The notes under the pieces were generated by a model that was given only the letters and a program-made list of their open reading frames with translations, made no database searches and was not told where the DNA came from. A stretch of DNA of 64,000 bases from Macrostomum lignano. Taxonomy: Eukaryota. A program made the position numbers and the translations under genes. The stretch lies in NCBI GenBank assembly GCA_002269645.1, contig NIVC01000085.1, forward strand, positions 372,001-436,000, given 5' to 3'. This document shows, one piece after another, positions 28,462 to 63,801 of the stretch (the first letter of the stretch is position 1; each line of letters begins with the position of its first letter).

Positions 28462-28744
28462 GGCCTATGAGCAGTATATGAGCAGCTTGTGCTATCGCTC
28501 AGCATAAAACTCTTTAGTTACATTACTTATAAATAAAATCTCACAACAAAATTTCTCTCTCTCTCTCTCTCTCTGATAAGAAAGAGCTGTTGGTTTGGTC
28601 ATATTTGTATTCGTACTCGATACGGTTTGAACAAATTTGAACTCTCGAGAGCCTCTACACGAATGTTGCACTGACAAACTGCACACGATTCAAAGGGGAC
28701 AAAAAAGCAGAAAAACGAAAACGAACCGTAAATTGCGAACCGGA

Positions 28745-35908: not shown

Positions 35909-36685
35909 TTTTCAGTTAGAAACGGTTGATCTCGTCAAAGTTAGTGCTCGTGCTCAAATTTTTCCTAATACCCTTCCAGAATTCAAATTGGAACAATTAA
36001 AAGCAACAAATTATTGTGTGACAAACTAAAATAATTGATTGAAATGTTAATTTGTCAAAGTTGAGTTCGAAAGTTGCATGTACAAAACTCACACACAGTG
36101 AGAGTGAGAGTGAGATTTGGGAACGCTTTCATAAGACCTAAATGTCACAACGCCTAAAACCAAAAATGCAGCCTTCTTCACATCGCCTAAATTTAATAAC
36201 GCCTAAATTTAATAACGCCTAAAGTCTTCATGCTTTTAGACATTGTGAAATTTAGGCGACGTGAAATTTAGGCGATGTGAAATTTAGGCGATGTGAAATT
36301 TAGACATTGTGAAGCGCCCCCAAAATTTGTATAGCAAAACGCAGCAAAAACCATAAATTACTGGAACTGTTGCGACTGTAATCGCATGTACATTGTAGCT
36401 AAAGAGAGCACATCTGCACTTGATAAGCAGTCTGCAATGATGAAGAATTGAAAATATTTCTGATTTGGCTGTAAAATATTAACTGCTGCATGTTGTTGCC
36501 GTGGAGTTTGCAATTGTTTCCGTTTTTGCTCTCAGCTTTAAAGCGTCCGAACTTTCTGGATGCCCCTCGTATGCTAGCAACCAGATATTAATAAAATATT
36601 AAAAAATCCGTGGATCTATCTATTTCAGCTTCAAAGCAGCTAAGAACGTTTACTCTGTCTTAAAGCGGTTGCTTCCTTCTCTCTC

Positions 36686-38511: not shown

Positions 38512-41500
38512 CTAGTCCAGCTTAGGCTGCTTAATAAAATGTCCGTCATCAAGAGACAGATTCATCAGGCCTCGTTTGTCCAACTTTCTACTCGCCAGAA
38601 ACTGGTGCTTCATCAGCTCATCCGCTGGCTTGCGCTCGATGCGATTTCGAGCGGTGCACTGGCTGTAGAAATCCTTCAGCTCAACAGAGCAACCGTCACG
38701 AATAGCGGGGGCTCCGCTTCTTTCGAGTCGCACAGCAACTTGAAAGATTGTTGGAACGTCAGCGAAGGGTCGGGAGCCGGTGGCCATCTGGAAGACCGAG
38801 CAGCCGAACGCCCAGATGTCCGACTCTCTGCTGTACTGCGGTCTGTCAGCCTCACCAGCTCCAAGCAGCTCTGGTGCCATGAAGTTCAAAGTGCCTTCAG
38901 GTTTTTGAGTTGTGGCCGAGATGTGGCTGACCGACTGCTCCAGCTTGATTGACAGGCCGAAGTCGATCAGCTTGATGCGCGTGTTGTCGGTAAGGACAAT
39001 GATGTTGGAGCAGTTGATGTCTCTGTGGATCACGGGCGGCCGCCGGCTGTGCAGGTAGAGCAGCGCGCTGCAGATCTGCAAGCGGTCGGTCGACAGTTTT
39101 GAATCTAAAAAAGTCAACTCAATCCAGGCTTAAAATCCAGAAATTCTCACCTGCTTGCTGAAGGAACGAACGGCTGCCTCATCCAGCGGCTTGTTGTCGA
39201 TAAACCTCTCCAAGCTGCGCCCGTCCAGCAGCTCCATGAACACAACGACTGTGGCGGGCTCCGGCTGAGCCATGTGCAAGAACCTGACGATGTTGGGATG
39301 CCGCAGTCGGCACAGGTTCCTCTCGCTCTCAATAGCGCCTTCGATTTTCTTTCTAATAGAATCCAGCTGGTCCCCGAGGTGCACAGGCAGTTTGAGAGTC
39401 TTGGCGGCGCACCTGATGCCCGTATCTGTCAGAACTTCGTGGACTTCGCCGAAACCTCCCCGACCAATAAGTCGACCGGTTTCCCAGTCCTCTAAGAATG
39501 GCGGATGGTCGTCCTCTCTGAAAATCCGCAGTTAAAATGGCGAATTCCTGCATAATTATACTTAAAGTCGTCCATGAGTCGCCCAAGAACCACTTTGAAG
39601 CGTTTTATTGCCTGCGACTTTGAAGCGACTCTGGGGCCGTAAAGTGGTAAGGCGTGCTGTAGAGTCACTGAGTTCTGTTTGAAGCGCATTTGCGTCGCTT
39701 GATGAATCAGAGTCGCATCTCAAGCGAAAGTTAAGCGCCAACACAACGATTCTTGGACGACTCTTTCACGATTCTTTTACGATTCTACAACTGACGTGAC
39801 GCGCTTGTGACGCAACCTTTGAGTCGCTAAAAAGTCACAGGAGTTGCTCAAGAGTCGCTAGAGTCACTAGAGAGTTGTTTGGAATGACTCTTTTACGATT
39901 CTACAACTGACGTGACGCGCTTGTGACGCAACCTTTGAGTCGCTAAAAAGTCACAGGAGTTGCTCAAGAGTCGCTAGAGTCACTAGAGAGTTGTTTGGAA
40001 TGACTCTTTAGCAATTCTTGCCATGGTAAATTTTTTAACGGGATGCATGGCTCTACGAAAAATCCGTAGCAAGGTGTAGAATGTGGAGCACTTCAACTGT
40101 GAATGCCCCGCCTTTACTCAGTACATTTTCAGGCCCCCGAGAATCTTTGCCAGCTTGTCCGCTACCTAAGGGCTACCGGGCGAGCGACCATCCACCTTTC
40201 TGGACTCTCCGGAGGGGGACCGCGCTGCGGACACCGGCACCACCGGATCTCCCGGCTTCGACCCCTTAGGGTATGTGCATATTTTTGGCTTTAATAGTCA
40301 GATTGACTTACGGCAGTTCAAGGGGCTCATCAAAGTAGACTTTGGTTTCGCACCTGAAACAATGATTAATAGATATAATAGAGTGAAAGTACTCAGATTA
40401 ATTATAATAATAATTTATTAAGAGTACACCTTGCACAAATTAGCAGATCTGAAGGCTGCGTACGGCTGCTCAGACCAAGGACTGGGGGTCGCCACACACA
40501 CCCTCAATTACCCCAGCTAATGCTGGCACCCATTTTACAGCTGGGTGAGCTGAAGCAATGCAGAGTTAAGTGTCTTGCTCAAGGAAGGACACAAATTGTT
40601 CTGAGTGCGTCGAGAATCGAACCAGGGATCTTTTAGTCGTAAGTGCGACGCTTTAACTCAGTTGTCGACAATTTTACAGAGATGCATTACAGATCCATAC
40701 AGATGCATCCGTTATTTTACGTTAAGGGCGAGATGAAGAGTCTTGATGATTTCTGCGGGCCAGGAGAGAGTGGAAAGGAGATGGAATGGATGAGAGAGAA
40801 GAAAGAGGATATGAGAGATGAAAAAATAAAGAAGAATTCAGAGGCGAGATGAGAGGAGAGATGAGAAGAGAGAAGAAGGGTGAGAAGATGAGAGGAGAGA
40901 GGAGATGAGATAAGATGAGAGGGGAGAGGAGATGAGATGAGAGGAGAGAGGTGAGGAGACGAGAGGAGAGAGGAGATGAGAGGAGAGAGGAGATGAGATA
41001 AGAGAGGAGATAAGATAAGATGAGAGAAGAGAGGAAATGAGATGAGAGGAGACAGGAGATAAGATTAGAGGAGAGAGATTCGATGAGAGGAGATGAGATG
41101 AGATGAGAGAGGAGATGAGATAAGCGGGGAGATGAGATAAGATGAGAGAAGAGAGGAGATGAGATGAGAGGAGACAAGAGATAAGATTAGAGGAGAGAGA
41201 TTAGATGAGAGGAGAGAGATGAGATGAGAGGAGACAGGAGATAAGATGAGAGGAGAGAGATGAGATGAGAGGAGAGAGGAGAGAAGAGATAAGATGAGAG
41301 GAGAGAGATGAGATGAGAGGAGAGAGGAGATAAGATGAGAGGAGAGAGATAAGATGAGAGTAGAGAGATGAGATGAGAGGAGAGAACTTAGAAGAGACAC
41401 AAACCTTGAGCAGGCCACATTGCTATTGTAAAGTTTCAAAGGACCCGAAGGCCAGATAGAGAGGCATTGCGGGCCGCTTGTGGCTCGCGGGTCGGAGGTT

Positions 41501-42062
41501 GTGGACCCCTGCTCTAAGCGCTAAGGCTACAAGCCATACTACTCAAAAACACAGAGTAAATGCATCTGCAAGAACCTCACCCACGCAGCAGCGCTTCCAG
41601 TTCAGCTTTGCCATTCTCCCTGGCCAAGTCTCGAGCCGTCCTGCCAAGCTGGTCCTCCAGGCTCCAGTCCGAGCCGGAGTCCAACAGAACCCGACAGACA
41701 GCGGTGGCGGCTGACGGGGACGCTGAGATGGTGGCCCTCATCAACGGCGAGACTGATTGCTCATCCTGGGCATTGACGGAAGCTCCAGAGTGCAGCAGGG
41801 CGGAGGCTGCGACAGAGTTGCCGCTCCAGGCAGCGTGATGCAGGCAGCTCTCGGACCACATGTCAGCACAGGTGGGATCTGCCAACTGCAGCAGCTGTTC
41901 CCACAAATATTCGTCACTGCAGTTGCTGTTGCCAGCTGCCCACATCAGCGCGGTGCGGCCGTATTTGTCCGGCAAGTCATAGCCGTCTTGGGTGGCCAGT
42001 TGTCGCAAGCCGGCCGAATTACCAGACGTGGCCAGCTTCAGTTGCTTTCGATTGGCTTTTTC
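38512..42062 (-). pseudogene. Gene B: 5'-truncated duplicate of gene D (ankyrin exon + two kinase exons), reading frame intact; complement join(41581..42062,39151..39517,38512..39075)
   Basis: Near-identical to D exons 3-5; 1413 nt in frame; no upstream exons, which are replaced by the junction at 42063-42168. Confidence 0.75.
39560..40030. repeat. Intronic element with 116-bp internal tandem repeat (2 units here, 5 units at 54986-55565)
   Basis: Unit starts at 39779 and 39895; at 54986, 55102, 55218, 55334, 55450. Confidence 0.85.
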
Positions 42063-42366
42063 CTGCAGCACCAGGATTTAGCACCAAGGGGCTTTAGCAC
42101 CAAGAGGCGCCAGCACCAAGGGGATTTAGCACCAAGGGGTTTTAGCACCAAGGGGCGCCAGCACCAAGTTAGCTCGGACCTTCAAGCAATCAACGTGCAC
42201 TTTAAACCGAATAACTTGCCTCTAGAATGATTTTTTGACATCAAACTTTCGATGTAGGGTTGGCGACTTGGGACACAGGCTTTAGAAACGCGAAAAAACG
42301 CTATTGCGAATCTCGAAGTCACGCAAGCAAAACAGACAAAACCGCTCTCCGAAATCCACTAAGCAG

Positions 42367-43530
42367 AGATCAGACGTCGAACTCGCTCGACGACAGCGAA
42401 GTCGATGACAACGAACTCAGCAGCTTCGGCGACTTTGCTGCCGCTCCCAGCCGGCTGGACCCGCTGGTCGAGAAGCGAATCGAACGGCTGAGACGCGAGA
42501 GCTACCGAGATGAGGTGGAGAATCTGGGCGCAGCTACTGGCGTGGGCTACTACGATCACGGAGACCTTGGTAGGGAGGATCCAACTAGGAATCGCGGTGA
42601 GCAGTCCAACTGAGAATATGGTAGTGATTTGCCTTCGATGGGACAGGCTATCGATGGGACAGGCTATCGATGGGACAGGCTATCGATGGGACAGGCTATC
42701 GATGGGACAGGCTATCGATGGGACAGGCTATCGATGGGACAGGCTATCGGTGGGACAGGCTATCGATGGGACAGGCTATCGATGGGACAGGCTATCGATG
42801 GGACAGGCTATCGATGGGACAGGCTATCGATGGGACAGGCTATCGATGGGACAGGCTATCGATGGGACAGGCTATCGATGGGACAGGCTATCGATGGGAC
42901 AGGCTATCGATGGGACAGGCTATCGATGGGACAGGCTATCGATGGGACAGGCTATCGATGGACAGGCTATCGATGGGACAGGCTATCGATGGGACAGGCT
43001 ATCGATGGGACAGGCTATCGATGGGACAGGCTATCGATGGGACAGGCTATCGATGGGACAGACTACCAATGTAGACAACCTGACTCACAAGCAGGAACCA
43101 CTCAATCGATCCCTCCCCGTCAGAGATTCTCTACAACCAGTCTGATGAGTACGAGTTTCAAGCGTCCAGTGGTGACGCTACCGCGACAGCGGCGGCTGCC
43201 TCCCTGCAGCAGCAGCAGCAGCTGGCCGCCAGAGCGGACGATGACGAACATTTCTACTCCGCGGGAGATCTGCAGAGGTCAAGGAGCAACTCGCCAACGC
43301 TGATGGGCGGCGCATCGGAGTCGGCCTTCGAAAGTGCCGGAGCGTTCGACGCTGCGCCGATGTCGACTTCAACTCCGGCCTCATCGTCTGTATCGCTGTA
43401 CTCGGCATACTCCGAAGATGACGGCAGCAGCTGCTGCAGCGAAGACCAGGTGCTCGACTACCTGGAGGAAGAGGATGATGAAGGGCGAGACTACGCAGAA
43501 AATGCCGGTGCAGACGATCAGGATCAGTAG
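42367..43530 (+). pseudogene. Gene E': 5'-truncated duplicate of gene E (exons 42367..42596, 43124..43530)
   Basis: Close copy of E exons 3-4; exons 1-2 absent. Confidence 0.75.
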
Positions 43531-43740
43531 TTTTCAGTTAGAAACGGTTGATCTCGTCAAAGTTAGTGCTCGTGCTCAAATTTTTCCTAATACCCTTCGA
43601 GAATTCAAATTGGAACAATTGAAAGCGACAATTTATTGTGTAAAAAACTCAAAAAACTGACTGAAATGATAATTTGTCAAAGTTGAGTTCGAAAGTTGCA
43701 TGTAAAAAACTCACACACAGTGAGAGTGAAATTTGGGAAC

Positions 43741-45885: not shown

Positions 45886-48800
45886 TCAGGAAATGCTGGC
45901 AGCTCTGTGTAGTCTATTCGTCATCAGCCGCATGCGCGTTATTTCACCGCCCGTCAGGAACTGGTGCCTCATCAGCTCCAGGGCCGACTGTCTCTTACTG
46001 CGGTTATGAGTCGTGCAGCTGCGGTAGAAATCCTCCAACTCTTTGGAGCAACCAGGTGGAAGTTTTGGACAACCGTTATTCTTTATCAGCTGGGCTATTG
46101 TTAATAAATTAGATGCGCTATGAAACGGCCTCTGACGGGTGGCCATCTGGTAGACTGAGCAGCCGAACGCCCAGATGTCCGACTCTCTGCTGTACTGAGG
46201 CGAGGTGTCAGCCTCGCCAGCTCCGAGCAGCTCTGGAGCCATGAAGTTATGAGTGCCTCTGGGTGTCTGAGTGCTAGCTAAGTTGTGACTGACTGACAGT
46301 TTCAGTTCGATTGAAAGGCCGAAGTCGATCAGCTTAATTCTCGTGCCTTCGGAAAGCACCATGATGTTGGAGCAGTTGATGTCTCTGTGGATCACGGGCG
46401 GCCGTCGGCTGTGCATGTAGAGCAGCGCGCTGCAGATCTGCAAGATGTTCCATTGATTACTGTAGTTTGAACTGGCCCTCTTATTTAAACGAGTCCTGTA
46501 AAACCTGTGTAAGCGTGTGCATGAGTGCGTTCCTGCGTACCGTATTGGCGCGCTTGAGTTGTATGTGATCAGGAGTCAGCGGAACGCGCTGGTTGTGGGA
46601 ACATGTCGCCGAAGGCGTGATCAAAAGCTCTCCAGTCAATATTATAATTTTTTGAAAGCACAGGAAACTTATTCACCTGCTCGCTAAAGTCTCGAATTTT
46701 GTTCTCAGGCATTGGAGCGCCGTTAATAAATGTTTCCAAGGTCTTTCCCTCCAGCAGCTCCATGAACAGAACGATTGTGGCAGGCTCAGTTTGAGCGATG
46801 TGCAAGAATCTGACAATGTTTCTGTGCTGCAGTCGGCACAGGTTCCTCTCGCTCTTGACCGCTTTGTCGATCTTTGTACGGTCTTGAGCATATTGATCAG
46901 CGGTCAATTGACCGACGGGCAGTTTAATAATTTTCGCAACACACTCGATGCCTTTGTCGGTAAGGACTTTGTAAACTTCGCCAGAGCCTCCTCTGCCGAT
47001 GAGGTCACCTACGTCCCAGCGCTCCATGAACGGCGGGTCTTCGTGTCTGTGTTTAGTTGAATTCGAATAGCGCACAATAATAAGCTTTTATGGAATGGAA
47101 CTATATGAAACAGTCCATTGCCGCTAACCTTGCTCTGTAACATGTCCCTGTACTGTAGCTGTCCCTGTACTGTAGCTGTCCCTGTACTGTAGCTGTCCCT
47201 GTACTGTAGCTGTCCCTGTACTGTAGCTGTCCCTGTACTGTAGCTGTCCCTGTACTGTAGCTGTCCCTGTACTGTAGCTGTCCCTGTACTGTAGCTGTTC
47301 CTGTACTGTAGCTGTCCCTGTACTGTAGCTGTCCCTGTACTGTAGCTGTCCCTGTACTGTAGCTGTCCCTGTACTGTAGCTGTCCCTGTACTGTAGCTGT
47401 CCCTGTACTGTAGCTGTCCCTGTACTGTAGCTGTTCCTGTAGCCTATACATGTGCACTATTTTACCCTCAGCTCAAGGTGTTTAGGGGAACTTACGGCGG
47501 CTTCAAAGGCTCCTCATAGAACTTCTTGCCCTTGTACCTACAAACAGGCAATACGGTGGTCGAAGTGACGCTTTGGTAGGTTAAAAATGTGCATAAAGTG
47601 TTTGAGCCAGAAAAACTGAATTAATTTAATTCTGAACTACAAGGTTCCAAGAAAACTCACTTTTGAAGCAGTTCAACAAGATCTGGGTTCCCATCGGACC
47701 TGATCAAATCCAGAGCCGTCTTGCTGCAGCTGTCCTTCAGACTCCAATCGGACCCAGCGTCCATCAGGATCTGACTGACTTGGACGGCGGTGTCTTTGGG
47801 CGCATAAAGAGCCGCCTGCATGAGCGGTGTGGACTTGCTTCTGTCTTCCCTGGCGTTGGCGGAGGCTCCAGCAGCCAGCAGGATGGAGGCTGCCACGGAA
47901 TTTCCACTGCTGGCTGACCAGTGCAGGCAGGTGCGAGATAAAGTTTCTGCACAGGTGGGGTCGCCAAGCTGCACCAGAACCTCCCACAGAGCCTCGTCAT
48001 TGCAGTTGCTGCTCTGAGCAGCTCTGATCAAGGCGGTGAAGCCGGAACTGTCGGGCAGGTCGCAGTTGGCTCGAGTTACCTTCTGCCGGAGACGAGTCCA
48101 GTCGCCCGCTCTGATCAACTTCTCCAGTTCTCCTTGTTCCGCCAGTTCCTACAGAAAGATACCGTGGACTATTCGATAACAATCTCACAAGTTGCATAAT
48201 AGATACGAAAGTTGCTACTTGCCTTTTCTGTTAGACCAGTGATGGAGTCATAGGCATCAACAGTCAGCCGCATCTCTCTGCAACAGAATAATTGACATTA
48301 TATTCGTAAAGTTTGGTTGCAAAACACAAATAAACAATTCCTCCATCACCTTTTGATATAGTTGGCCAGCTCTGAGTGGCCATTGATCCTTGCCAGATCA
48401 AACGCCGTCCGACCCTCGACATCTTTGAGTCCGAGCAGGCGCTCTCTCACAGAGTTGCTGGGCTTGCCGGCCTGAGGCTTGTAGAACTGCCGCTGCCTCA
48501 GCAGGTGCAGCAGGTGCTTGGCGCATCTCCAACTGCCGGTCCGCGCCGCCTCCATCAGCGGAGTGGCGCCCCGCCGGTTCTGCAGCCACTTCGCATCGAA
48601 CGACAGCAGCATCAGCAGCCGCAGGTGGTCCCGACGGGCTGCCAGGTGCGCGGCCGTGTCGCCCGAGTCATCAATAATCGATTTTTGATTCGCGCCCAGC
48701 TCGAACAAGTACATGACGCACTTCTCAGCTTGAATGGGCGTCTCCGGAGCGTCGGCAACCAGCATGAGGACGGTTCGGTTAGCGGCATCAGGCTTGCTCA

Positions 48801-49238
48801 CCAGCTGGCTCGTTGCCAGCCGCTGCACCTGAGCAAAGTCACCTTGGATGACGGACTGGGCGAGAGTCTCCAGGGCAGCTGTTGAGACTTCGGTGCCTGC
48901 CTGATGATGTGCTGGGAGATCCTGCGGCGTGAAAATTTAAAGTCTCGTCAATAAATTTTTTATTGTAGACAATGTAGACAATCGAGCCCATGGCTACGGG
49001 CCAGATGAAAGTGGAGAGGAGAGGGAATAGAAGATGACAGATGACAGACAAGCGAAGAGGGGAGAGAAGAGTTGAAAAGAGACAAGAGTATTGAGCAGGC
49101 CTGATAGTTAATGTATAAAGTTTCAAAGGATCCGAGGTCCGCATAGAGAGGCTTCGGGGGCCCCTGCTTTACAGGCAAGTCATTTGATTTCAAACTCACT
49201 TCACTGTCTGCAGCAGAGGTCGACTCATCTCGAGACAT
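45886..49238 (-). CDS. Gene C: two ankyrin blocks + STE-like kinase; complement join(49200..49238,48350..48921,48223..48277,47661..48148,46677..47046,45886..46437), 691 aa
   Basis: All splice phases (0,2,0,2,0) match, 2076 nt divisible by 3; GDTAAHLAA, GATPLMEAA, STPLMQAA; GRGGSG, CVAK, HRDINCSN, DFG, GTHNFMAPE. First 39-nt exon tentative; micro-exon uses a GC donor. Confidence 0.85.
47146..47437. repeat. Intronic 17-bp minisatellite (TGTCCCTGTACTGTAGC)
   Basis: In the ankyrin-kinase intron of C. Confidence 0.93.
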
Positions 49239-53718: not shown

Positions 53719-56700
53719 CTAGTCCAGCTTAGACTGCTTAATAAAATGTCCGTCATCAAGAGACAGATTCATCAGGCCTCGTTTGTCCAACTTTTTACTG
53801 GCCAAGAATTGGTGCTTCATCAGCTCATCCGCTGGCTTGCGCTCGATGCGATTTCTAGCGGTGCACTGGCTGTAGAAATCCTTCAGCTCAACAGAGCCGC
53901 CGTCACGAATAGCGGGGGCTCCGCTTCTTTCGAGTCGCACAGCAACTTGAAAGATTGTTGGAACGTCAGCGAAGGGTCGAGAGCCGGTGGCCATCTGGAA
54001 GACCGAGCAGCCGAACGCCCAGATGTCCGACTCTCTGCTGTACTGCGGTCTGTCAGCCTCACCAGCTCCAAGCAGCTCTGGTGCCATGAAGTTCAAAGTG
54101 CCTTCAGGTTTTTGAGTTGTGGCCGAGATGTGGCTGACTGATTTCTCCAGCTTGATTGACAGGCCGAAGTCGATCAGCTTGATGCGCGTGTTGTCGGCGA
54201 GGACAATGATGTTGGAGCAGTTGATGTCTCTGTGGATCACGGGCGGCCGTCGGCTGTGCAGGTAGAGCAGCGCGCTGCAGATCTGCAAGCGGTCGGTCGA
54301 CAGTTTTGAATATAAAAAGCCAACTCAACCCAGGCTGAAAATACAGAAATTCTCACCTGCTTGCTAAAGGAACAAACGGCTGCCTCATCCAGCGGCTTGT
54401 TGTCGATAAACCTCTCCAAGCTGCGCCCGTCCAGCAGCTCCATGAACACAACGACTGTGGCGGGCTCCGGCTGAGCCATGTGCAAGAACCTGACGATGTT
54501 GGGATGCCGCAGTCGGCACAGGTTTCTCTCGCTCTCAATAGCGCCTTCGATTTTCTTTCTAATAGAATCCAGCTGGTCCCCGAGGTGCACAGGCAGTTTG
54601 AGAGTCTTGGCGGCGCACCTGATGCCCGTATCTGTCAGAACTTCGTGGACTTCGCCGAAACCTCCCCGACCAATAAGTCGACCGGTTTCCCAGTCCTCTA
54701 AGAATGGCGGATGGTCGTCCTCTCTGAAAGTCCGCAGTTAAAATGGCGAATTCCTGCATAGTTATACTTAAAAGTCGTCAAAGAGTCGCCCAAGAACCAC
54801 TTTGAAGCGTTTTATTGCCTGCGACTTTGAAGCGACTCTGGGGTCGTAAAGTGGTAAGGCGTGCTGTAGAGTCACTGAGTTGTGTTTGAAGCGCATTTGC
54901 GTCGCTTGATGAATCAGAGTCGCATCTCAAGCGAAAGTTAAGCGCCAACACAACGATTCTTGGACGACTCTTTCACGACTCTTTTACGATTCTACAACTG
55001 ACGTGACGCGCTTGTGACGCAACCTTTGAGTCGCTAAAAAGTCACAGGAGTTGCTCAAGAGTCGCTAGAGTCACTAGAGAGTTGTTTGGAATGACTCTTT
55101 TACGATTCTACAACTGACGTGACGCGCTTGTGACGCAACGTTTGAGTCGCTAAAAAGTCACAGGAGTTGCTCAAGGGTCGCTAGAGTCACTAGAGAGTTG
55201 TTTGGAATGACTCTTTTACGATTCTACAACTGACGTGACGCGCTTGTGACGCAACGTTTGAGTCGCTAAAAAGTCACAGGAGTTGCTCAAGGGTCGCTAG
55301 AGTCACTAGAGAGTTGTTTGGAATGACTCTTTTACGATTCTACAACTGACGTGACGCGCTTGTGACGCAACGTTTGAGTCGCTAAAAAGTCACAGGAGTT
55401 GCTCAAGGGTCGCTAGAGTCACTAGAGAGTTGTTTGGAATGACTCTTTTACGATTCTACAACTGACGTGACGCGCTTGTGACGCAACGTTTGAGTCGCTA
55501 AAAAGTCACAGGAGTTGCTCAAGGGTCGCTAGAGTCACTAGAGAGTTGTTTGGAATGACTCTTTAGCAATTCTTGCCATAGAAAAATTTTTAATGGCATG
55601 CTCTACGAAAAATCCGTAGCAAGGAATGCCCACGGACTCTCCGGTGTAGAATGTGGAGCACTTCAACTGTGAATGCCCCGCCTTTACTCAGTACATTTTC
55701 AGGCCCCCGAGAATCTCTACCAGCTTGTCCGCTACCTAAGGGCTACCGGGCGAGCGACCATCCACCTTTCTGGACTCTCCGGAGGAGGACCGCGCTGCGG
55801 ACACCGGCACCACCGGATCTCCCGGCTTCGACCCCTTAGGGTATGCGCTTTAATAGTCAGATTGACTTACGGCAGTTCAAGGGGCTCATCAAAGTAGACT
55901 TTGGTTTCGCACCTGAAACAATGATTAATAGATATAATAGAACGAAAGTACTCAGATTAATTATAATAGTAATATTTTATTAACAGTACACCTTGCCCTA
56001 ATGAGCAGATTGGAAGGTTGCATACGGCTGTTCAGTCCAAGGACTGGTGGGTCGCCACACACAGCCTCAATTACCCCAGCTAATGCTGGCACCCATTTTA
56101 CAGCTGGGTGAACTGAAGCAATACAGAGTTAAGTGTCTTGCTCAAGGACACAAAGTGTTCCGAGTGCGTCGAGAATCGAACGCGGGACCTTTTAGTCGTA
56201 AGTGCGACGCTTAACCCGGTTGTCGGCAATTGTTTTACAGATGCATTACAGATCCATACTACTCAAAAACACCGATTAATGTATCTGTTTTTTACTTCAA
56301 GGGCCAGATAAAAAGTTTTGTAATGAGATAAGATGAGAGGAGAGAGGAGATGAGATGAGAGGAGAGAGGAGATGAGACAAGAGAGGAGATGAGAGGAGAT
56401 AGATGAGATGAGAGAAGAGAGGAGATAAGATGAGAGGAGAGAGATAAGATGAGAGGAGAGAGATGAGAGGAGAGGAGAGAGATGAGATGAGAGGAGAGAG
56501 ATGAGATGAGAGGAGAGAGATTAGATGAGAGGAGAGAGATGAGAGAAGAGGAGCTAGAGAACTTAGAAGAGACACAAACCTTGAGCAGGCCGCATTGCTA
56601 TTGTGAAGTTTCAAAGGACCCGAAGGCCACTTAGGCCAGATAGAGAGGCATTGCGGGCCGCTTGTGGCTCGCGGGTCGGAGGTTGCGGACCCCTGCTCTA

Positions 56701-58702
56701 AGCACTAAGGCTACAAGCCATACTACTCAAAAACACAGAGTAAATGCATCTGCAAGAACCTCACCCACGCAGCAGCGCTTCCAGTTCAGCTTTGCCATTC
56801 TCCCTGGCCAAGTCTCGAGCTGTCCTGCCCAGCTGGTCCTCCAGGCTCCAGTCCGAGCCGGAGTCCAACAGAACCCGACAGACAGCGGTGGCGGCAGACG
56901 GGGACGCTGAGATGGTGGCCCTCATCAACGGCGAGACTGATTGCTCATCCTTGGCATTGACGGAAGCTCCAGAGTGCAGCAGGGCGGAGGCTGCGACAGA
57001 GTTGCCGCTCCAGGCAGCGTGATGCAGGCAGCTCTCGGACCACATGTCAGCACAGGTGGGATCTGCCAGCTGCAGCAGCTGTTCCCACAAATATTCGTCA
57101 CTGCAGTTGCTGTTGCCAGCTGCCCACATCAGCGCCGTGCGGCCGTACTTGTCCGGCAAGTCGTAGCCGTCTTGGGTCGCCAGTTGTCGCAAGCCGGCCG
57201 AATTGCCAGACGTGGCCAGCTTCAGTTGCTTTCTATTGGCTTTTTCCTGCAAAAGCAGGAGGCTAATTATAGGTAATTAACAATTGAGCCTTGCAGTCAA
57301 TGTTTTTATACTGATCCCACTGTGTTCCTCTTGTTTGAGGGGGCGAATCAGATTTCTTCATTGGGGGAGGGGGCGCCAGCACCAGAGGCGCCAGCACCAG
57401 AGGCGCCAGCACCAGAGGCGCCAGCACCAGAGGCGCCAGCACCAGAGGCGCCAGCACCAGAGGCGCCAGCACCAGAGGCGCCAGCACCAGAGGCGCCAGC
57501 ACCAGAGGCGCCAGCACCAGACACCAGAGGCGCCAGCACCAGAGGCGCCAGCACCAGAGGCGCCAGCACCAGAGGCGCCAGCACCAGAGGCGCCAGCACC
57601 AGAGGCGCCAGCACCAGAGGCGCCAGCACCAGAGGCGCCAGCACCAGAGGCGCCAGCACCAGAGGCGCCAGCACCAGAGGCGCCAGCACCAGAGGCGCCA
57701 GCACCAGAGGCGCCAGCACCAGAGGCGCCAGCACCAGAGGCGCCAGCACCAGAGGCGCCAGCACCAGAGGCGCCAGCACCAGAGGCGCCAGCACCAGAGG
57801 CGCCAGCACCAGAGGCGCCAGCACCAGAGGCGCCAGCACCAGAGGCGCCAGCACCAGAGGCGCCAGCACCAGAGGCGCCAGCACCAGAGGCGCCAGCACC
57901 AGAGGCGCCAGCACAGAGGCGCCAGCACCAGAGGCGCCAGCACCAGAGGCGCCAGCACCAGATGCGCCAGCACTAGAGGCTTCACACTGTAGTCGCTGTA
58001 CTCACCTGATCTGTCAGACCGGAGATGTAGCCTTCGTTAGTCACGACCAGACGCATCTCCCTGCAACACCAATTCACAGATAATGAGATGCACCCTAGAT
58101 TCCTGTGCTTGAAAGTAAAAGTTTCAACTCTCACCGCTCAATATCGCTAGCCAGCTCGGAGTGGTCACCGAGTCTCGCCAAATTAACGCTGTCCGACCAT
58201 CGACATCTTTGAGGCCGAGCAGGCGCTCTCTCTCAGAGTTTCCGTACTTCTCGCACTCGTTGAACTGCTTCTGCCTGAGCAGGTGCAGCAGGTGCTTGGC
58301 GCATCTCCAGCTGCCGGTCCGCGCCGCCTCCATCAGCGGAGTGGCGCCCCGCCGGTTCTGCAGCCACTTCGCATCGAACGACAGCAGCGTCAGCAGCCGC
58401 AGGTGGTCCCGACGGGCTGCCAGGTGCGCGGCTGTGTCGCCCGAGCCGTCAGTCGACTTTGGATTGGCGCCCAGCTCGAACAAGTACATGACGCACTTCT
58501 CAGCCTGAATGGGCGTCTCCGGAGCGTCGGCAACCAGCATGAGGACGGTTCGGTGAGCTGCGTCAGTATTGAAGGTCACCAGCTGGCGCGTTGCCAGCCG
58601 CCGCATCTGAGCAAAGTCGCCTCGAATGACTAGCTGGGAGAGACGCAGCAGAGCAGTCTCAAACTCGATATGGTCCAAGGCCAGTTGAAGAAGTGACTGC
58701 AT
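53719..58702 (-). CDS. Gene D: two ankyrin blocks + STE-like kinase; complement join(58135..58702,58006..58060,56765..57246,54357..54723,53719..54282); carries an apparent 1-bp frameshift at ~58185
   Basis: Exon structure mirrors C; summed length 2036 nt is one short of 679 codons; adding one base at 58185 restores AFNLARLGDHSELA homologous to AFDLARINGHSELA in C. Confidence 0.8.
57367..57975. repeat. Intronic 15-bp minisatellite (GCGCCAGCACCAGAG)
   Basis: In intron 2 of D. Confidence 0.95.
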
Positions 58703-58889
58703 CTTTTATTTGCTCCTACTGTTGGCTCAGAACGGTCTTCGCATAAAACAAAATCGTTCGGAACAAGTTGAAGAAGTCCTTGACTGCGGTAACTAATTAT
58801 CCAACCATATTATAAATAAAAGCTGGCAATCACTTTTAGGACGTTTTGGTGGCCTCCAATTGGGCCGTTTTAGCTTTAGTTTGCCTACC

Positions 58890-59130
58890 CCCAGAATCTG
58901 ACGAATCTCACCCCCAGAATCTGACGAATCTCACCCCCAGAATCTGACGAATCTCACCCCTTAGAGTCTGACGATTCTTACCCCCAGAATCTCACGATTC
59001 TTACCCCCAGAATCTCACGATTCTAACCCCCAGAATCTCACGATTCTTACCCCCAGAATCTCACGATTCTTACCCCCCAGAATCGCACGATTCTTACCCC
59101 CCAGAATCTCACGATTCTTACCCCCCAGAA
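58890..59130. repeat. Short variable minisatellite (CCCCAGAATCTCACGATTCTTAC) between the Rel gene and gene D
   Basis: Direct reading. Confidence 0.85.
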
Positions 59131-59619
59131 TCTGTCCTTCACAACCACAGGAGCAGAGAAGCCTGAAGATGTGAGACAGCCCCGCTTTACATCCCCTGTC
59201 ATTGGGCTCAGATTGTCGCCTAATATTAGCGGCCTTTCCAACCCAGCTAGCAAAAATTAGACACAAAGACAAGCATTTAATGAATAGTATAAAATAGTAA
59301 TGAATCATGAATTTATATTGTAAGTAAAAGCTACACAAAAAAATCTTGAGTAGCTCATTTACTGCTCAGCAATTTGCTAAAAAATGTACTTTGTAAGATT
59401 CTTAGAAAAAAAGGGAAGCCGGAACCGTCTGCAGGTTGGCACCCGGTCGCAGGTGTATAAAAAATGGCTAAGAATTGAGCCTCAAAAATCAAAATCAACC
59501 AACATTATAGCCGATATATAAAAAATGATCAAATTATTGAATAAAATCAATAATTCTGGAATTGAATATTGGCGCCTAGAATATCATCAGAGTCAAAGAG
59601 TGTAACTGGGGCTTTCTGC

Positions 59620-62600
59620 CTACTGCCGCTGTTGAACAGGCGGCAAGTCGTTGATCTCCGAGATCTCCTCCATGAATTTGGAAATTTCCATCATATCCAA
59701 ATCAGGCAGGTCCAGGTCGTCTGAGGGAATGAGAAAAAAGCGTAGAAAAAAACTATAAATTCATTTTTGTTTATACTACTTATAACTGCTGTTGAATTAG
59801 TAGTATAAACCATAGCAAAAATGTGCAGATTTTTGCAAAAAATAATGAAAATAAATACCCGGGATTGGCGACTCTTCCTCCCGCTCAGGATGCTGCGGCG
59901 GAAGCTGAGACACCGCACCGAATGCACCGTCAAGTAGGCCGCTGCTGCACTGCGGACAGGCAAGCCGATTAAAGAAGACATCGGCCGCCAGCTCGTTGTT
60001 GCCGCTGGTGTCGGCGAAACGAAGCTCGCACTGGATTCGTTCGGCCTCGGCCAGCGCCACGGCTGGCGGCAACTGCAGCTGCAGCTCCAGCAGATTCTTC
60101 GGGGCGGGCAGCCGAGGGTTTATGAAGAGCTGGGAGGCTGTGTGTGGCTCAGCAACTGAGGATCTGGGAGGCCGTGTGTGGCCCAGCAACTGAGGATCTG
60201 GGAGACTGTGGCCCAACAACTGAGGAGCTGGGAGGCTGGCCCAGCAACTGAGGATCTGGGAGGCTGGCCCAACAACTGAGGAGCTGGGAGGCTGGCCCAG
60301 TAAGTGGGATCTGGGAGGCTGGCTCAGCAACTGAGGAGCTGGTAGGCTGTGGCCCAGTAACTGAGGATCTGGGAGGCTGGCTCAGCAACTGAGGATCTGG
60401 GAGACTGTGGCCCAGCAACTGAGGATCTGGGAGGCTGGCCCAACAACTGAGGAGCTGGGAGGCTGGCCCAGCAAGTGGGATATGGGAGGCTGGCTCAGCA
60501 ACTGAGGAGCTGGTAGGCTGGCCCAACAACTGAGGAGCTGGGAGGCTGGCTGAGCAACTGAGGATCTGGGAAGCTGGCCCAGCAACTGAGGATCTGGGAG
60601 GCTGGCCCAACAACTGAGGATCTGGGAGGCTGTGGCCCAGCAACTGAGGATCTGGGAGGCTGTGGCCCAGCAACTGAGGAGCTGGGAGGCTGTGGCCCAA
60701 CAACTGAGGATCTGGGAGGCTGTGGCCCAGCAACTGAGGAGCTGGGAGGCTGTGGCCCAACAACTGAGGATCTGGGAGGCTGGCTCAGCAAGTGAGGATC
60801 TGGGAGGCTGGTGGCCCAGTAACTGAGGATCTGGGAGGCTGGCTCAGCAACTGAGGATCTGGGAGACTGTGGCCCAGCAACTGAGGATCTGGGAGGCTGG
60901 CCCAACAACTGAGGAGCTGGGAGGCTGGCCCAGCAAGTGGGATATGGGAGGCTGGCTCAGCAACTGAGGAGCTGGTAGGCTGGCCCAACAACTGAGGAGC
61001 TGGGAGGCTGGCCCAGCAAGTGGGATCTGGGAGGCTGGCTCAGCAAGTGGGATCTGGGAGGCTGGCCCAGCAACTGAGGAGCTGGGAGGCTGGCTCAGCA
61101 ACTGAGGATCTGGGAGGCTGGCTCAGCAACTGAGGATCTGGGAGGCTGGCCCAACAACTGAGGATCTGGGAGGCTGGCCCAACAACTGAGAATCTGGGAG
61201 GCTGGCTGAGCAACTGAGGATCTGGGAAGCTGGCCCAACAACTGAGGATCTGGGAGGCTGGCCTAACAACTGAGGATCTGAGATGCTGGCCCAACAACTG
61301 AGGATCTGGGAGGCTGGCCCAACAACTGAGGATCTGGGATGCTGGCTCAGCAACTGAGGATCTGGGAGGCTGGCTCAGCAACTGAGGATCTGGGAGGCTG
61401 GCCCAGCAACTGAGGATCTGGGAGGCTGGCTGAGCAACTGAGGATCTGGGAAGCTGGCCCAGCAACTGAGGATCTGGGAGGCTGGCCCAACAACTGAGGA
61501 TCTGGGAGGCTGGCTCAGCAAGTGAGGATCTGGGAGGCTGGTGGCCCAGCAACTGAGGATCTGGGAGGCTGGTGGCCCAACAACTGAGAATCTGGGAGGC
61601 TGTGGCCCAGCAACTGAGGATCTGGGAGGCTGGCTGAGCAACTGAGGATCTGGGAGGCTGTGGCCCAGCAACTGAGGATCTGGGAGGCTGGCTGAGCAAC
61701 TGAGGATCTGGGAGGCTGGCTCAGCAACTGAGGATCTGGGAGGCTGGCCCAGCAACTGAGGATCTGGGAGGCTGGCCTAGCAACTGGGGGTCTGGGAGGC
61801 TGGCCCAGCAACTGAGGATCTGGGAGGCTGGCCCAGCAACTGAGGATCTGGGAGGCTGGCCCAGCAACTGAGGATCTGAGAGGCTGTGGCCCAGCAACTA
61901 AGGAGCTGGGAAGGGTGGCTCAGCAATGGAGGATTCGGTTTTAAAGGCTCAGATGACGCAGAGCAGCAGGAGAAGCACACAGAGAACAAGGGACTTACAG
62001 CCCTGACAGCTTTGTGCTGAACATCAGCAATTGGCTCCTCCTGATGCGGGCTTGCCAGCCACATGTTATAATTGCCAGAACCTGGAAATTGTTACATTTG
62101 CAGAGTTGATTTTTTACGATTTCAAAAATATAACAACAATGCTCGATAAGCCTACTGTAAGTAGACAGACAGCACATAAATTACTTACGCGCCAAGCCTT
62201 CAATATGCAGCCAAGCTTTTTGCTGAGTTGGCACCATCGGCAGACAGTCGGGCATCATTAGCGACTTCGGTGTAATTCGCACCGCCCTGTGCTGTCCTGA
62301 GTAGTATAGATAGCAAATTCGTTTAAAACTGTGTCGGAATTACAATAAAACGGCTAAGTTAAAAAACATTCAGCGCAACCCACTGTAGATGGCTTCAGTA
62401 ACGATTCGAATGCAGTTGCCAGTTGGCTCGTGGTGGAACACGAAGGCCAGGTGCACGCTCTCCAGCAATGATATATGGCGCGTGTACACGTCGTGAGCAG
62501 TTTGGGTGAATTCTGCCGATATGTATCGAAAGTATACATTGTAGAGCAATAATTACTACAATATAGGAAAGAAAGTTGCTGCAATTTGAGGGACTCACGG

Positions 62601-63801
62601 TGGAGAAACGGCACCTCGCCAGTTTGCAGGCGGTTGGCGATGGCCTGGCGCAGGGCCTCGTGATTTCGCTTGACGCAGAAAATTGCGATGTCGCTCAGCC
62701 TGCGCGATAAACAATGGATGAGTTGATTATCTCTCCCCAGTTTTTAATACCCAGGGTGCTTCCCTTATGCCTTTCATTATAAGCCCTAACACATCGCTTT
62801 CTTGCGATCCCGCATCCACTTTGTGTGATCCCACACTCCCGTCTGTGATCTCACATCCCCTTTCCTGTGATCTCACATCCCCTTTCCTGGGGTCCCATAT
62901 CCCTTCCTGTGATCCCATATCCCATCAATGACCCCACATCCCTATCAGTGATTCCACATCCCTATCAGTGATCCCACATCCCTATCAGTGATCCCACATC
63001 CTTATCAGTGATCCCACATCCCTATCAGTGATTCCATATACTTTTCTTGTGATTTCATATCCCTATCTATATTTCCTATATGTTCCTATAGATCCTATAT
63101 TTCTTTCATGTGATTCAATATTTCTTTCCTGTGATCCCACATCCCTTTCCTGTGATCCCATACTCCCTATCAGTAATCCCACGTCCATTTCTTGTGATCC
63201 TATATCCCTATCCTGTGATCCCATATTCCTATTAGTGATCCCACATCCCTTTCCTGTGATCCCAAATCTCCTTCAGCGGTTCCACATTTCCGCCAATGAT
63301 CCCAAACCATTCGAGCCATCCTCCTGCCCTCAGTAACCCAGATTCCCCTATAATGATGGTTATCATACCTTAATCTTTTGAAAGTCCCAGAATCTATAGT
63401 CAAATGACCCCCCCCCCACTGCTCACTCGACCAGCAGCCCGACCCTGCCATCCTCAAATGTGAGGCTGGGCATTTCGTAGCGACCCCGGAAGATGCCGTT
63501 CTCGCAGCCGCTGCCCACCATGAAGTAGGGATGGATGAGACCGTCGGAGCTGACTGTGGACACGGTGACCGAGATGGAGCCTTGCAGGTAAGGAGCCGAA
63601 GCTGCATCGGTGGACAGACAGGCGGTCACGTACTTGGACCGATTGTATGGCTGTCGACTGTACAAGATGGAGCGAGCCTTCTCAGTGACAAACCGGAATC
63701 TGTACTCTTGCTGAGGCTGGTCCACGATGGAGGCGGAGAGTTGACATTGAGCAGTCATGCTCTGGTTGTCAGGGGGCAGCGTCTGCAGGTTGCCATGACG
63801 A
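59620..63801 (-). CDS. Divergent Rel/NF-kB-family transcription factor (RHD + IPT + acidic tail); complement join(63427..63801,62599..62699,62384..62512,62189..62296,61999..62081,59859..60129,59620..59720); 374 aa from ATG 63758
   Basis: [61 protein letters not shown] (cf. RelA [27 protein letters not shown]), [21 protein letters not shown]; six consecutive splice junctions are phase-compatible. A possible upstream exon lies outside the window. Confidence 0.87.
60130..61925. repeat. Intronic ~28-31-bp variant minisatellite (GCAACTGAGGATCTGGGAGGCTGGCCCA)
   Basis: Fills almost all of intron 5 of the Rel gene. Confidence 0.95.
62810..63260. repeat. Degenerate 20-bp minisatellite (CCCACATCCCTATCAGTGAT)
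   Basis: In intron 1 of the Rel gene. Confidence 0.8.

What the first reader, a model, noticed from the sequence alone, without database searches (positions are those of the whole stretch)
59620..63801. Divergent Rel/NF-kB gene hidden in short exons among satellites, abutting the ankyrin-kinase cluster
Seen: seven phase-compatible exons give RHD + IPT + acidic tail, stop at 59620, 918 bp upstream of the gene D ATG on the same strand. The ORF track shows only fragments. Established: Rel proteins are controlled by ankyrin proteins (IkB, p105 C-terminus) and activated via MAP3K-type kinases. Inference: a linked innate-immune signalling locus. If the host is a flatworm this is additionally notable, because I recall NF-kB not being found in several surveyed flatworms (recollection, needs checking).
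Basis: partly seen in the sequence, partly recalled or inferred. Interest (0 to 1): 0.78.

Follow-up and report, generated by a model that had tools for sequence, protein, structure and literature searches.

The report
Divergent Rel-homology gene in Macrostomum
The window really does contain a seven-exon, transcribed and selectively constrained gene for a very divergent Rel/NF-kB-type transcription factor of the flatworm Macrostomum lignano, but it is already in public databases and nothing shows that it works together with the ankyrin-kinase genes next door.

Summary
On the minus strand, seven GT-AG exons (63758-59620) encode a 363-aa protein. It is identical to UniProt A0A1I8IGA4 ('RHD domain-containing protein') and matches NCBI PAA91492.1 (Macrostomum lignano, contig NIVC01000085.1). 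Pfam RHD_DNA_bind covers the whole domain but scores 24.7-25.9 bits, just under the 27-bit cut-off. Homology is secured through five M. lignano paralogues that pass clearly, and through a family profile that hits p65/c-Rel/RelB (E~1e-13), far better than NFAT. An AlphaFold model matches two-domain NF-kB structures, but sequence-only evidence for the dimerisation (IPT) domain is not significant. The gene is under strong purifying selection (14 synonymous: 1 conservative change between copies; pN/pS 0.02). It is the end member of a tandem RHD gene cluster that continues just beyond the window. It keeps the base-reading residues R20/R22/E26 but has lost the KRKR nuclear-localisation motif that IkB masks in canonical Rel proteins. 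The 'linked innate-immune locus' reading is unsupported. The adjacency is seen only among recent duplicates, the ankyrin repeats are generic, the kinase is not IKK/NIK-like, and this copy of gene D carries a frameshift. Divergent flatworm RHD genes were published in 2026. Overall this is a correct call of modest novelty.

The parts
63781..63791 (-). Probable SL trans-splice acceptor (AACCTGCAG|AC) marking the 5' end of the mature mRNA. The junction lies between 63783 and 63782.
   Evidence: The transcript-derived protein P0001 begins with the codon directly after this CAG. The site fits the published M. lignano SL acceptor motif [T/C]TNCAG (PMC8629364). The 11-mer occurs only twice in the window against 0.09 expected. 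It is conserved in the L001 copy; the L002 copy has one mismatch upstream of the CAG.
63427..63758 (-). Exon 1 (ATG at 63758). It encodes the N-terminal part of the RHD, including the recognition loop RFRFVTE.
   Evidence: The donor is GTGAGC. The Pfam and PDB alignments start at residue 10.
62790..63287 (.). Satellite of ~20-21 bp units, ~23.5 copies, inside intron 1
   Evidence: TRF
62599..62699 (-). Exon 2, encoding [33 protein letters not shown]. This is the 'CVKK...NPF' core of the RHD.
   Evidence: It aligns to p65 [24 protein letters not shown].
62384..62512 (-). Exon 3, covering the end of the RHD N-terminal domain and the linker
   Evidence: The donor GTGGGT is the one used by the transcript-derived model. 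The L002 copy has a 1-bp deletion in this exon.
62189..62296 (-). Exon 4, the start of the second (IPT-like) beta domain
   Evidence: AlphaFold strands 204-241 in P0001 numbering
61999..62081 (-). Exon 5, in the middle of the second domain
60145..61934 (.). 28-bp satellite, ~63 copies, filling intron 5
   Evidence: TRF. Present in the L001 and L002 copies too.
59859..60096 (-). Exon 6, covering the end of the second domain and a disordered segment. The position where paralogues carry KRKR reads EREEES here.
   Evidence: The acceptor gaag|AAT is the one in the deposited model. An alternative in-frame acceptor at 60129 would add 11 residues.
59620..59720 (-). Exon 7, encoding the acidic C-terminal tail with a predicted amphipathic helix ([22 protein letters not shown]). 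The stop TAG is at 59622-59620.
   Evidence: Helix 348-361 in the AlphaFold model, at moderate confidence.
59427..59437 (-). Second copy of AACCTGCAG|AC, 191 nt after the Rel stop codon and 726 nt before the gene D ATG. It is a candidate SL acceptor for gene D.
   Evidence: Sequence match only; no transcript evidence.
53722..58702 (-). Neighbour 'gene D', an ankyrin-repeat + Ser/Thr kinase gene. It is not shown to belong functionally to the Rel gene. Blocks: ankyrin 58702-58127 and 57276-56764; kinase 54737-53722. There is a 1-bp deletion between 58185 and 58184 relative to its duplicates.
   Evidence: Pfam Ank_2 at 63-64 bits and Pkinase at 147 bits; PDB kinase matches; frameshift; no called gene here in the NCBI set.

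Best explanation
This is a functional, transcribed gene of Macrostomum lignano. It encodes a short (363 aa), highly divergent class-II-like (RelA/c-Rel/Dorsal-type) Rel-homology-domain transcription factor.

Predicted anatomy:
- an N-terminal RHD DNA-binding domain (residues ~10-188);
- a second all-beta, IPT-like domain (~195-300);
- a disordered segment;
- a strongly acidic C-terminal amphipathic helix.

Genomic setting: it is the outermost and most divergent member of a tandem cluster of about five RHD genes. The cluster is present in three near-identical copies in the neopolyploid assembly. There is also an extra segmental duplicate of this gene and its downstream neighbours about 72 kb away.

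Inferred mechanism: it binds kappaB-like DNA as a dimer through the conserved recognition-loop residues R20, R22 and E26 plus K121/R122, and it activates transcription through the acidic tail. It has lost the KRKR nuclear-localisation motif that its paralogues and canonical Rel proteins carry. It is therefore unlikely to be regulated by classical IkB masking of an NLS. It probably reaches the nucleus as a heterodimer with an NLS-bearing paralogue, or by another route.

Shown: gene structure, homology, selection and cluster context. Inferred: DNA binding, dimerisation, transactivation and the import route.
For: - Gene structure: all-GT-AG seven-exon model identical to the deposited proteins. 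The deposited models derive from a genome-guided RNA-seq assembly with trans-splice-defined 5' ends (PMC5730564).
- RHD homology, protein alone: Pfam PF00554 E=1.2e-5 over 2-163/169; p65 N-terminal domain is the only credible PDB hit.
- RHD homology, via family: exhaustive phmmer finds only M. lignano RHD proteins (E down to 2.6e-11), all with PF00554 at 42-89 bits.
- Subfamily: the family profile hits p65/c-Rel/RelB at 5e-14 to 5e-13, Gambif1 at 5e-11, p50 at 2e-8 and NFATc1 at 0.37.
- Fold: AlphaFold with a 23-sequence alignment gives two beta domains (pLDDT 65). Foldseek's top 22 hits are NF-kB/Rel two-domain chains, E 5e-14 to 5e-10, TM on target 0.47-0.63.
- Selection: window vs L001 copy has 14 synonymous and 1 non-synonymous difference; pS 0.055 is close to intron divergence 0.050, pN is 0.0012, p=1.7e-8.
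- Cluster: consecutive accessions PAA91492-91497 on the window's contig, with the same set on two other contigs. An RHD paralogue lies 2 kb upstream on the same strand.
- Residues: R20/R22/E26 kept, Y36->F, C38->T, KRKR->EEES; CVKR aligns to CVKK.
Against: - The protein alone falls just under Pfam's curated threshold (24.7-25.9 vs 27 bits).
- No RHD_dimer hit in any family member even at E<=10.
- Profile-profile comparison of the C-terminal halves is not significant (hhalign E=0.2).
- The AlphaFold alignment contained p65 and c-Rel, which biases the model toward that fold. Single-sequence prediction failed (pLDDT 34).
- Y36F, C38T, and the losses of the NLS and of the RRPS-type site could mean altered or lost DNA binding.
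- No expression or functional data were found.
- One of the four copies (L002) has a 1-bp deletion in exon 3.
Confidence: 0.8

Rival explanations
1. The Rel gene and the downstream ankyrin-kinase gene(s) form a linked innate-immune signalling module. In it, the ankyrin blocks act like IkB or the p105 C-terminus on the Rel protein, and the kinase acts like an activating MAP3K/IKK.
For: - Same strand, 918 bp apart.
- The same Rel-to-gene-D order occurs in all three copies examined.
- Both genes are preceded by the same rare AACCTGCAG|AC element, which fits the SL acceptor motif. The second copy lies 191 nt after the Rel stop, within the spacing typical of M. lignano operons.
- The kinase is STE/MAP3K-like.
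Against: - The three copies are recent duplicates (97-100% protein identity), so their shared order is not independent conservation.
- About five ankyrin-kinase paralogues occur in both orientations across the window, and most are not next to a Rel gene.
- The ankyrin repeats match consensus DARPins and ankyrin-1/2, with no IkB-family chain in the best 60.
- The kinase is equally close to WNK1, TNIK, MAP3K2 and MAP3K5.
- The Rel protein lacks the NLS that IkB masks.
- This copy of gene D is frameshifted and is not called in the transcript-derived annotation.
- Flatworm surveys did not find RIPK, NIK and most other NF-kB pathway components (PMC4894443).
Confidence: 0.07
2. The protein keeps the RHD fold but is a non-DNA-binding or modulatory subunit. 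As an NLS-less partner, it would heterodimerise with the canonical-looking paralogues and either retain them in the cytoplasm or supply them with an acidic activation domain.
For: - Only this paralogue has Y36->F and KRKR->EEES, while all five others keep RFRY and K-R-x-R.
- It scores below the Pfam threshold.
- It sits in the same cluster as potential partners.
- It keeps an aromatic residue (W216) at the p65 F213 dimer-interface position, like its paralogues.
- It is under strong purifying selection, so whatever it does matters.
Against: - The three base-contacting residues R20, R22 and E26, and the CVKR loop, are retained. Pure loss of DNA binding would not predict that.
- Phe can often substitute for Tyr in stacking contacts (inference).
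- There is no direct evidence for heterodimerisation.
Confidence: 0.1
3. It is a decaying duplicate (pseudogene) in a repeat-rich, heavily duplicated region, and the open frame is fortuitous.
For: - The region is full of satellites and segmental duplications.
- One copy (L002) has a frameshifting 1-bp deletion.
- The RHD score is sub-threshold.
Against: - pN/pS is 0.02-0.03, with synonymous divergence equal to intron divergence.
- The 363-codon frame is intact across seven exons with canonical splice sites in three of four copies.
- The gene models are transcript-derived.
Confidence: 0.02

Closest known systems
Vertebrate RelA (p65)/c-Rel/RelB and insect Dorsal/Gambif1 (class II Rel proteins)
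   Same: - Collinear RHD N-terminal domain with Q-P...R-F-R-x-x-x-E, H-P, C-V-K-[KR] and N/V-P-F landmarks.
- A second beta domain follows, then a non-ankyrin C-terminal acidic region.
- These are the best profile and fold matches.
   Different: - Only 16-18% identity.
- Y36->F, C38->T, G40->K in the recognition loop.
- No KRKR NLS and no RRPS PKA site.
- The dimerisation domain is not detectable by sequence profiles.
- The protein is far shorter (363 aa).
M. lignano RHD paralogues Mlig028098, Mlig029207/Mlig000125 (two genes), Mlig020664 (UniProt 'RHD domain-containing protein')
   Same: - Same species and same tandem cluster.
- Same size class (340-390 aa) and same two-domain layout.
- 22-30% identity, and the best hits in an exhaustive search.
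   Different: - The paralogues pass Pfam clearly (42-66 bits) and keep RFRYE.E and a KR.R motif, but lack the CVK[KR] basic pair.
- The window gene keeps CVKR but has RFRFVTE and an acidic stretch in place of the NLS.
The seven divergent RHD transcription factors of Schmidtea mediterranea (PMC13563047, 2026)
   Same: They are flatworm RHD genes on long branches, hard to assign to NF-kB classes, with no demonstrated immune role.
   Different: - No detectable one-to-one relative of the window gene outside M. lignano by phmmer.
- Whether the Macrostomum cluster is orthologous to any planarian RHD was not tested.
NF-kB p105/p100/Relish (RHD and IkB-like ankyrin repeats in one polypeptide)
   Same: An RHD coding unit is followed on the same strand by ankyrin-repeat coding sequence.
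   Different: - Here they are separate genes 918 bp apart, with a stop codon and a probable separate 5' acceptor.
- The ankyrin gene also carries a kinase domain.
- There is no glycine-rich region and no IkB-specific similarity.
Ankyrin + kinase proteins such as ILK and TNNI3K (N-terminal ankyrin, C-terminal kinase) and RIPK4/ANKK1 (reverse order). This comparison for gene D is from my own knowledge.
   Same: Gene D has N-terminal ankyrin repeats followed by a Ser/Thr kinase domain with an intact HRD...DFG...APE pattern.
   Different: - The best solved relatives of the kinase are WNK1, TNIK, MAP3K2 and MAP3K5 at ~1e-22, with no single clear orthologue.
- It is a locally amplified family of about five copies in 64 kb.

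Membership tests
Rel homology domain superfamily (Pfam PF00554 + PF16179) | N-terminal RHD DNA-binding domain recognised by profile | tested here: met
   PF00554 E=1.2e-5 / 2.6e-5, covering 2-163 of 169 positions. The score of 25.9/24.7 bits narrowly misses the curated 27-bit cut-off. Homology is secured transitively: the closest relatives (E to 2.6e-11) score 42-89 bits, and the family profile hits p65 at 5.5e-14.
Rel homology domain superfamily (Pfam PF00554 + PF16179) | Recognition loop R-x-R-Y-x-C-E-G that contacts DNA bases | tested here: inconclusive
   R20, R22 and E26 are conserved. Tyr->Phe23, Cys->Thr25 and Gly->Lys27 differ. The paralogues keep Tyr. DNA binding itself was not tested.
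Rel homology domain superfamily (Pfam PF00554 + PF16179) | C-terminal IPT/dimerisation domain (RHD_dimer) | tested here: inconclusive
   Against: no PF16179 hit in any of seven family members at E<=10, and hhalign of the C-terminal halves gives E=0.2. For: the HMM alignment to p65/c-Rel runs ~35 residues into the domain, the AlphaFold model has an all-beta second domain (pLDDT 65-79), and Foldseek aligns ~305 columns to two-domain NF-kB chains. The alignment given to AlphaFold contained p65 and c-Rel.
Rel homology domain superfamily (Pfam PF00554 + PF16179) | Basic NLS at the C-terminal end of the RHD | tested here: not met
   The position of p65 K301-R304 reads E-E-E-S. Four of the five aligned paralogues have K-R-K/S/L-R and c-Rel has KKQK.
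Class I NF-kB (p105/p100/Relish) | C-terminal ankyrin repeats (with a glycine-rich hinge) in the same polypeptide | tested here: not met
   The protein ends at residue 363 with an acidic tail. There is no Ank hit in Pfam at E<=10. The family profile scores p50/p100 lower than p65/c-Rel.
Class II Rel (RelA/c-Rel/RelB/Dorsal/Dif) | RHD most similar to the RelA/c-Rel/Dorsal group, followed by a non-ankyrin C-terminal transactivation region | tested here: inconclusive
   The similarity ranking favours p65/c-Rel/RelB, and an acidic tail with a predicted helix is present. No phylogeny with broad invertebrate sampling could be built, because the searches returned only mammalian sequences. Transactivation is not testable here.
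NFAT / NFAT5 (TonEBP) | RHD closest to NFAT-type profiles and structures | tested here: not met
   NFATc1 scores E=0.37 against ~1e-13 for Rel proteins with the family profile. NFAT and TonEBP chains rank below all NF-kB chains in Foldseek.
   Gene D's ankyrins are consensus-like, with no IkB-family chain in the best 60. The kinase is closest to WNK1/TNIK/MAP3K2/MAP3K5. The Rel protein lacks the NLS. This copy of gene D is frameshifted. Physical interaction is not testable here.
SL trans-spliced operon of M. lignano (PMC8629364) | Adjacent same-strand genes, with the downstream gene carrying an SL acceptor ([T/C]TNCAG) within about 1 kb (repeat-adjusted) of the upstream gene's end | tested here: inconclusive
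   Orientation and a motif-matching CTGCAG 191 nt after the Rel stop are present. There are no SL-read or polycistronic transcript data. Gene D is absent from the transcript-derived gene set.

The most novel reading that the evidence does not exclude
The Rel gene and the ankyrin-kinase gene 918 bp downstream are processed from one polycistronic, SL trans-spliced pre-mRNA. Each is preceded by the same rare AACCTGCAG|AC acceptor element. Together they would form a flatworm-specific module in which an NLS-less Rel factor is controlled by a co-expressed ankyrin-kinase, a 'split p105 plus kinase' arrangement that replaces the canonical IkB/IKK pathway flatworms lack.
Probability: 0.05. Interest if true: 0.7.

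Novelty: already known. Interest (0 to 1): 0.3.

Why it matters
Flatworms were long described as lacking most of the NF-kB pathway, and their RHD genes have only just begun to be catalogued (planarians, 2026). Macrostomum is an early-branching flatworm in which transgenesis works. A compact tandem cluster of five short Rel-like genes could therefore be used experimentally to ask what RHD factors do in an animal without recognisable IkB/IKK/NIK components. Four of these genes have a canonical NLS, and one constrained member has replaced it with an acidic stretch. The window gene itself adds little beyond what the databases already hold. The value lies in the family context and the NLS-loss observation, neither of which I found described in the literature I could search.

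Tried and rejected
- Single-sequence AlphaFold of P0001 failed (pLDDT 34).
- The profile search (A2) of the 5.8-billion-protein set returned only M. lignano proteins because of the word index.
- Adding p65, c-Rel and Dorsal as bait returned 1574 hits, but the 120 listed are all mammalian p65/c-Rel. No invertebrate or flatworm sampling was obtained, so no phylogeny was built.
- Pfam RHD_dimer was not detected in any family member.
- hhalign of the C-terminal halves was not significant. The test was underpowered: template Neff 1.6.
- Full-text search for the gene identifiers found nothing, and neither did searches of the supplements of three M. lignano papers.
- My first junction choices were superseded by the transcript-consistent model C. 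These were exon 3 ending at 62380/62381, exon 4 starting at 62286, and exon 6 starting at 60129.
- The upstream ATG at 63796 was rejected as the start. It is out of frame, stops after 12 codons, and lies upstream of the probable trans-splice site.
- The NFAT assignment was rejected.
- The pseudogene reading was rejected.


Full report
**What is there.** The minus strand between 63758 and 59620 carries seven short coding blocks separated by introns. Two of the introns are almost entirely satellite DNA: a ~21-bp unit of ~23 copies at 62790-63287, and a 28-bp unit of ~63 copies at 60145-61934. A bacterial-style ORF list shows only fragments.

Joining the blocks at canonical GT..AG sites gives an open frame. 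My first hand model gave 372 aa. The database protein P0001 showed slightly different junctions at exons 3/4 and 5/6. With those junctions (model C, still all GT-AG) the product is 363 aa. The stop TAG is at 59622-59620.

**Whose gene it is.** The first protein search hit only Macrostomum lignano. L001 positions 1-2183 are 100% identical to window 2183-1, and L003 fixes the window as NIVC01000085.1:372001-436000 of assembly GCA_002269645.1.

Model C is identical to UniProt A0A1I8IGA4 ('RHD domain-containing protein'). It also matches NCBI PAA91492.1 (BOX15_Mlig020092g1, 'hypothetical protein, partial'), whose gene spans window 59620-63776. These gene models come from a genome-guided RNA-seq assembly in which 5' ends were set by mapped trans-splice sites (PMC5730564).

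The sibling protein P0001 starts with the codon immediately after AACCTGCAG| at 63783/63782. That sequence fits the published M. lignano SL acceptor motif [T/C]TNCAG (PMC8629364). So the gene is not hidden. It is already modelled, transcript-supported and auto-annotated.

**Is it a Rel homology protein?**
- *The protein alone.* It matches Pfam RHD_DNA_bind end to end (profile 2-163/169) at E=1.2e-5 to 2.6e-5. The score of 24.7-25.9 bits is just under the curated 27-bit cut-off. Its only credible PDB sequence hit is the p65 N-terminal domain (E=0.0019). There, [26 protein letters not shown] aligns to [24 protein letters not shown].
- *Exhaustive search.* A phmmer search of 1.84 billion cluster representatives found 13 proteins. 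All the identified relatives are from M. lignano; one hit (P0012) is a low-complexity sequence without an RHD. The paralogues among them score 42-89 bits on PF00554.
- *Family profile.* A profile of the family hits solved p65, c-Rel and RelB at 5e-14 to 5e-13, Dorsal-type Gambif1 at 5e-11, p50/p105 at ~2e-8, p100 at 1.6e-3 and NFATc1 at 0.37.

The N-terminal RHD is therefore secure, and the affinity is to class II Rel proteins rather than to NFAT or p100/p105. There are no ankyrin repeats in the protein.

**The second domain.** Evidence for the IPT/dimerisation domain is weaker.
- No family member hits Pfam RHD_dimer even at E<=10.
- A separate profile-profile comparison of the C-terminal halves is not significant (E=0.2). 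It aligns the expected first strand, and the canonical profile was shallow.
- The HMM alignment to p65/c-Rel runs ~35 residues past the linker.
- A MAFFT alignment with p65, c-Rel and Dorsal is collinear to the end of the RHD.
- AlphaFold with a 23-sequence alignment gives an all-beta second domain at pLDDT 65-79 (overall 65.4).
- Foldseek's top 22 hits are two-domain NF-kB/Rel chains (E 5e-14 to 5e-10, ~305 aligned columns, TM on target 0.47-0.63), followed by NFAT and TonEBP.

That alignment contained p65 and c-Rel, and the single-sequence run failed. I therefore rate the IPT assignment as probable, not proven.

**Functional residues.**
- Mapping p65 sites through the alignment shows the base-contacting R33, R35 and E39 conserved as R20, R22 and E26.
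- Tyr36 is Phe23 and Cys38 is Thr25.
- The CVKK loop is CVKR.
- The aromatic residue at the p65 F213 dimer-interface position is Trp216, as in all paralogues.
- The KRKR nuclear-localisation motif is the element IkB masks in canonical Rel proteins (established knowledge). At that position the window protein reads E-E-E-S, whereas the aligned paralogues have K-R-x-R.
- The last 42 residues carry 14 acidic and 3 basic residues and include a predicted helix.

**Is it functional?** Between the window copy and the copy ~72 kb away on the same contig, the CDS differs at 15 codons. Of these, 14 are synonymous and 1 is D72E. pS is 0.055, which equals the divergence of the short non-satellite introns (0.050). 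pN is 0.0012, so pN/pS is 0.022 (binomial p=1.7e-8). Against the L002 copy the counts are 9:1. This is strong purifying selection. The L002 copy has a 1-bp deletion in exon 3, which is either real or an assembly indel.

**Genomic context.** The real context is a tandem RHD cluster. About 2 kb upstream on the same strand, just beyond window position 64000, lies Mlig028098g3 (358 aa, PF00554). Consecutive accessions PAA91493-91497 on this contig include further RHD genes. The same five-paralogue set recurs on NIVC01000103.1 and on a 439-kb contig. This fits the neopolyploid, highly duplicated genome (PMC5730564; PMC10733133).

**The ankyrin-kinase neighbours.** The window holds about five ankyrin-plus-kinase genes:
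- plus strand, ~366-4232 and ~19460-23235;
- minus strand, ~42077-38515, ~48936-45889 and 58702-53722 (gene D).

Gene D has Ank_2 (63-64 bits) and Pkinase (147 bits). Its kinase is about equally similar to WNK1, TNIK, MAP3K2 and MAP3K5 (~1e-22). Its ankyrin block matches DARPins, ankyrin-1/2, NOMPC and tankyrase, with no IkB-family chain in the best 60.

A gene D homologue lies ~1 kb downstream of Rel in all three copies. These copies are 97-100% identical duplicates, so this is inherited linkage and not independent conservation. The window's gene D has a 1-bp deletion between 58185 and 58184, relative to both duplicates and to a paralogue. It lies about 22 codons before the exon's GTGAGA donor. 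No gene is called there in the transcript-derived annotation.

Together with the missing NLS, this leaves the 'linked innate-immune locus' idea without support. One point in its favour is that the 11-mer AACCTGCAGAC occurs only twice in the window (0.09 expected). One copy is at the Rel 5' end. The other is 191 nt after the Rel stop, a spacing compatible with M. lignano operons. I keep co-transcription as a low-probability novel reading.

**Literature.**
- A 2015 survey did not find most NF-kB pathway components in flatworms, including M. lignano (PMC4894443).
- A 2024 survey found no p50/p105 in Platyhelminthes (PMC11432056).
- A 2026 paper reports seven highly divergent RHD genes plus a conserved NFAT5 in S. 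mediterranea, with no link to the TBK1 response (PMC13563047).
- I found no paper that mentions the M. lignano RHD genes.

**Verdict.** The gene is a real, constrained, divergent Rel-type factor. It is already catalogued, divergent flatworm RHD genes are now published, and the proposed functional link to the ankyrin-kinase cluster is not supported.

Noticed in passing
L003:1-7952 (beyond window position 64000); L002:2191-8254: A second RHD gene (Mlig028098, 357-358 aa, recognition loop RFRYESE, KRKR NLS) lies ~2 kb upstream of the window gene on the same strand. Accession order suggests three more RHD genes follow, so the window clips the end of a tandem RHD cluster.
   Followed up: partly
L002:3771-6414: An intron of the upstream RHD paralogue contains a THAP9/P-element-type transposase. 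The ORFs of 589 and 275 aa hit Tnp_P_element, TNP-like RNaseH N/C and GBD, and THAP.
   Followed up: partly
window 58184-58185: There is a 1-bp deletion in the first ankyrin exon of gene D, relative to the L001 and L002 copies and to the paralogue at 48.9 kb. It shifts the frame ~22 codons before the splice donor. It could be a pseudogene allele or an assembly indel.
   Followed up: yes
L002:11576-11703: The NIVC01000103.1 copy of the Rel gene has a 1-bp deletion in exon 3 (CCACCAC to CCA-CAC). This explains the truncated 206-aa NCBI model PAA (Mlig027515g1).
   Followed up: yes
window 59427-59437 and 63781-63791: AACCTGCAGAC occurs exactly twice (0.09 expected). Both copies are on the minus strand and both fit the SL trans-splice acceptor motif. 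One is at the Rel 5' end and one is in the Rel-gene D spacer.
   Followed up: partly
window 366-4232 (+), 19460-23235 (+), 38515-42077 (-), 45889-48936 (-), 53722-58702 (-): There is a local amplification of ankyrin-repeat + Ser/Thr-kinase genes in both orientations. Some pairs are 92-100% identical, for example 38.5-42.1 kb against 53.7-57.3 kb.
   Followed up: partly
window 27970-28464 (-): A single-exon ORF of 165 aa encodes a universal stress protein (Usp) domain, 81 bits.
   Followed up: partly
window 16267-17088 (+): An ORF carries a partial retroviral-type integrase core (rve, 32.1 bits, just under the cut-off). It is probably an LTR-retrotransposon remnant.
   Followed up: partly
window 34366-36026 (+) and 42239-43657 (+): Two near-identical copies of an ORF contain a long coding tandem repeat (GTGYRWDRLSMGQAID units) followed by a Ser/Asp/Glu-rich tail. 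The tail has no Pfam hit.
   Followed up: no
window 57284-58083: A satellite inside gene D's large intron reads as long PEAPA / TRGAS peptide repeats in several frames. A 23-bp satellite of ~10.6 copies lies at 58886-59133, between Rel and gene D.
   Followed up: no
L004 (Logan SRR30276804, 1124-nt contig): An intronless contig encodes a 327-aa RHD protein (P0030) of the same family, with RFRYETE and KRKR. It is the only family member found outside the NCBI/UniProt M. lignano sets. The source organism of the run was not identifiable with these tools.
   Followed up: partly
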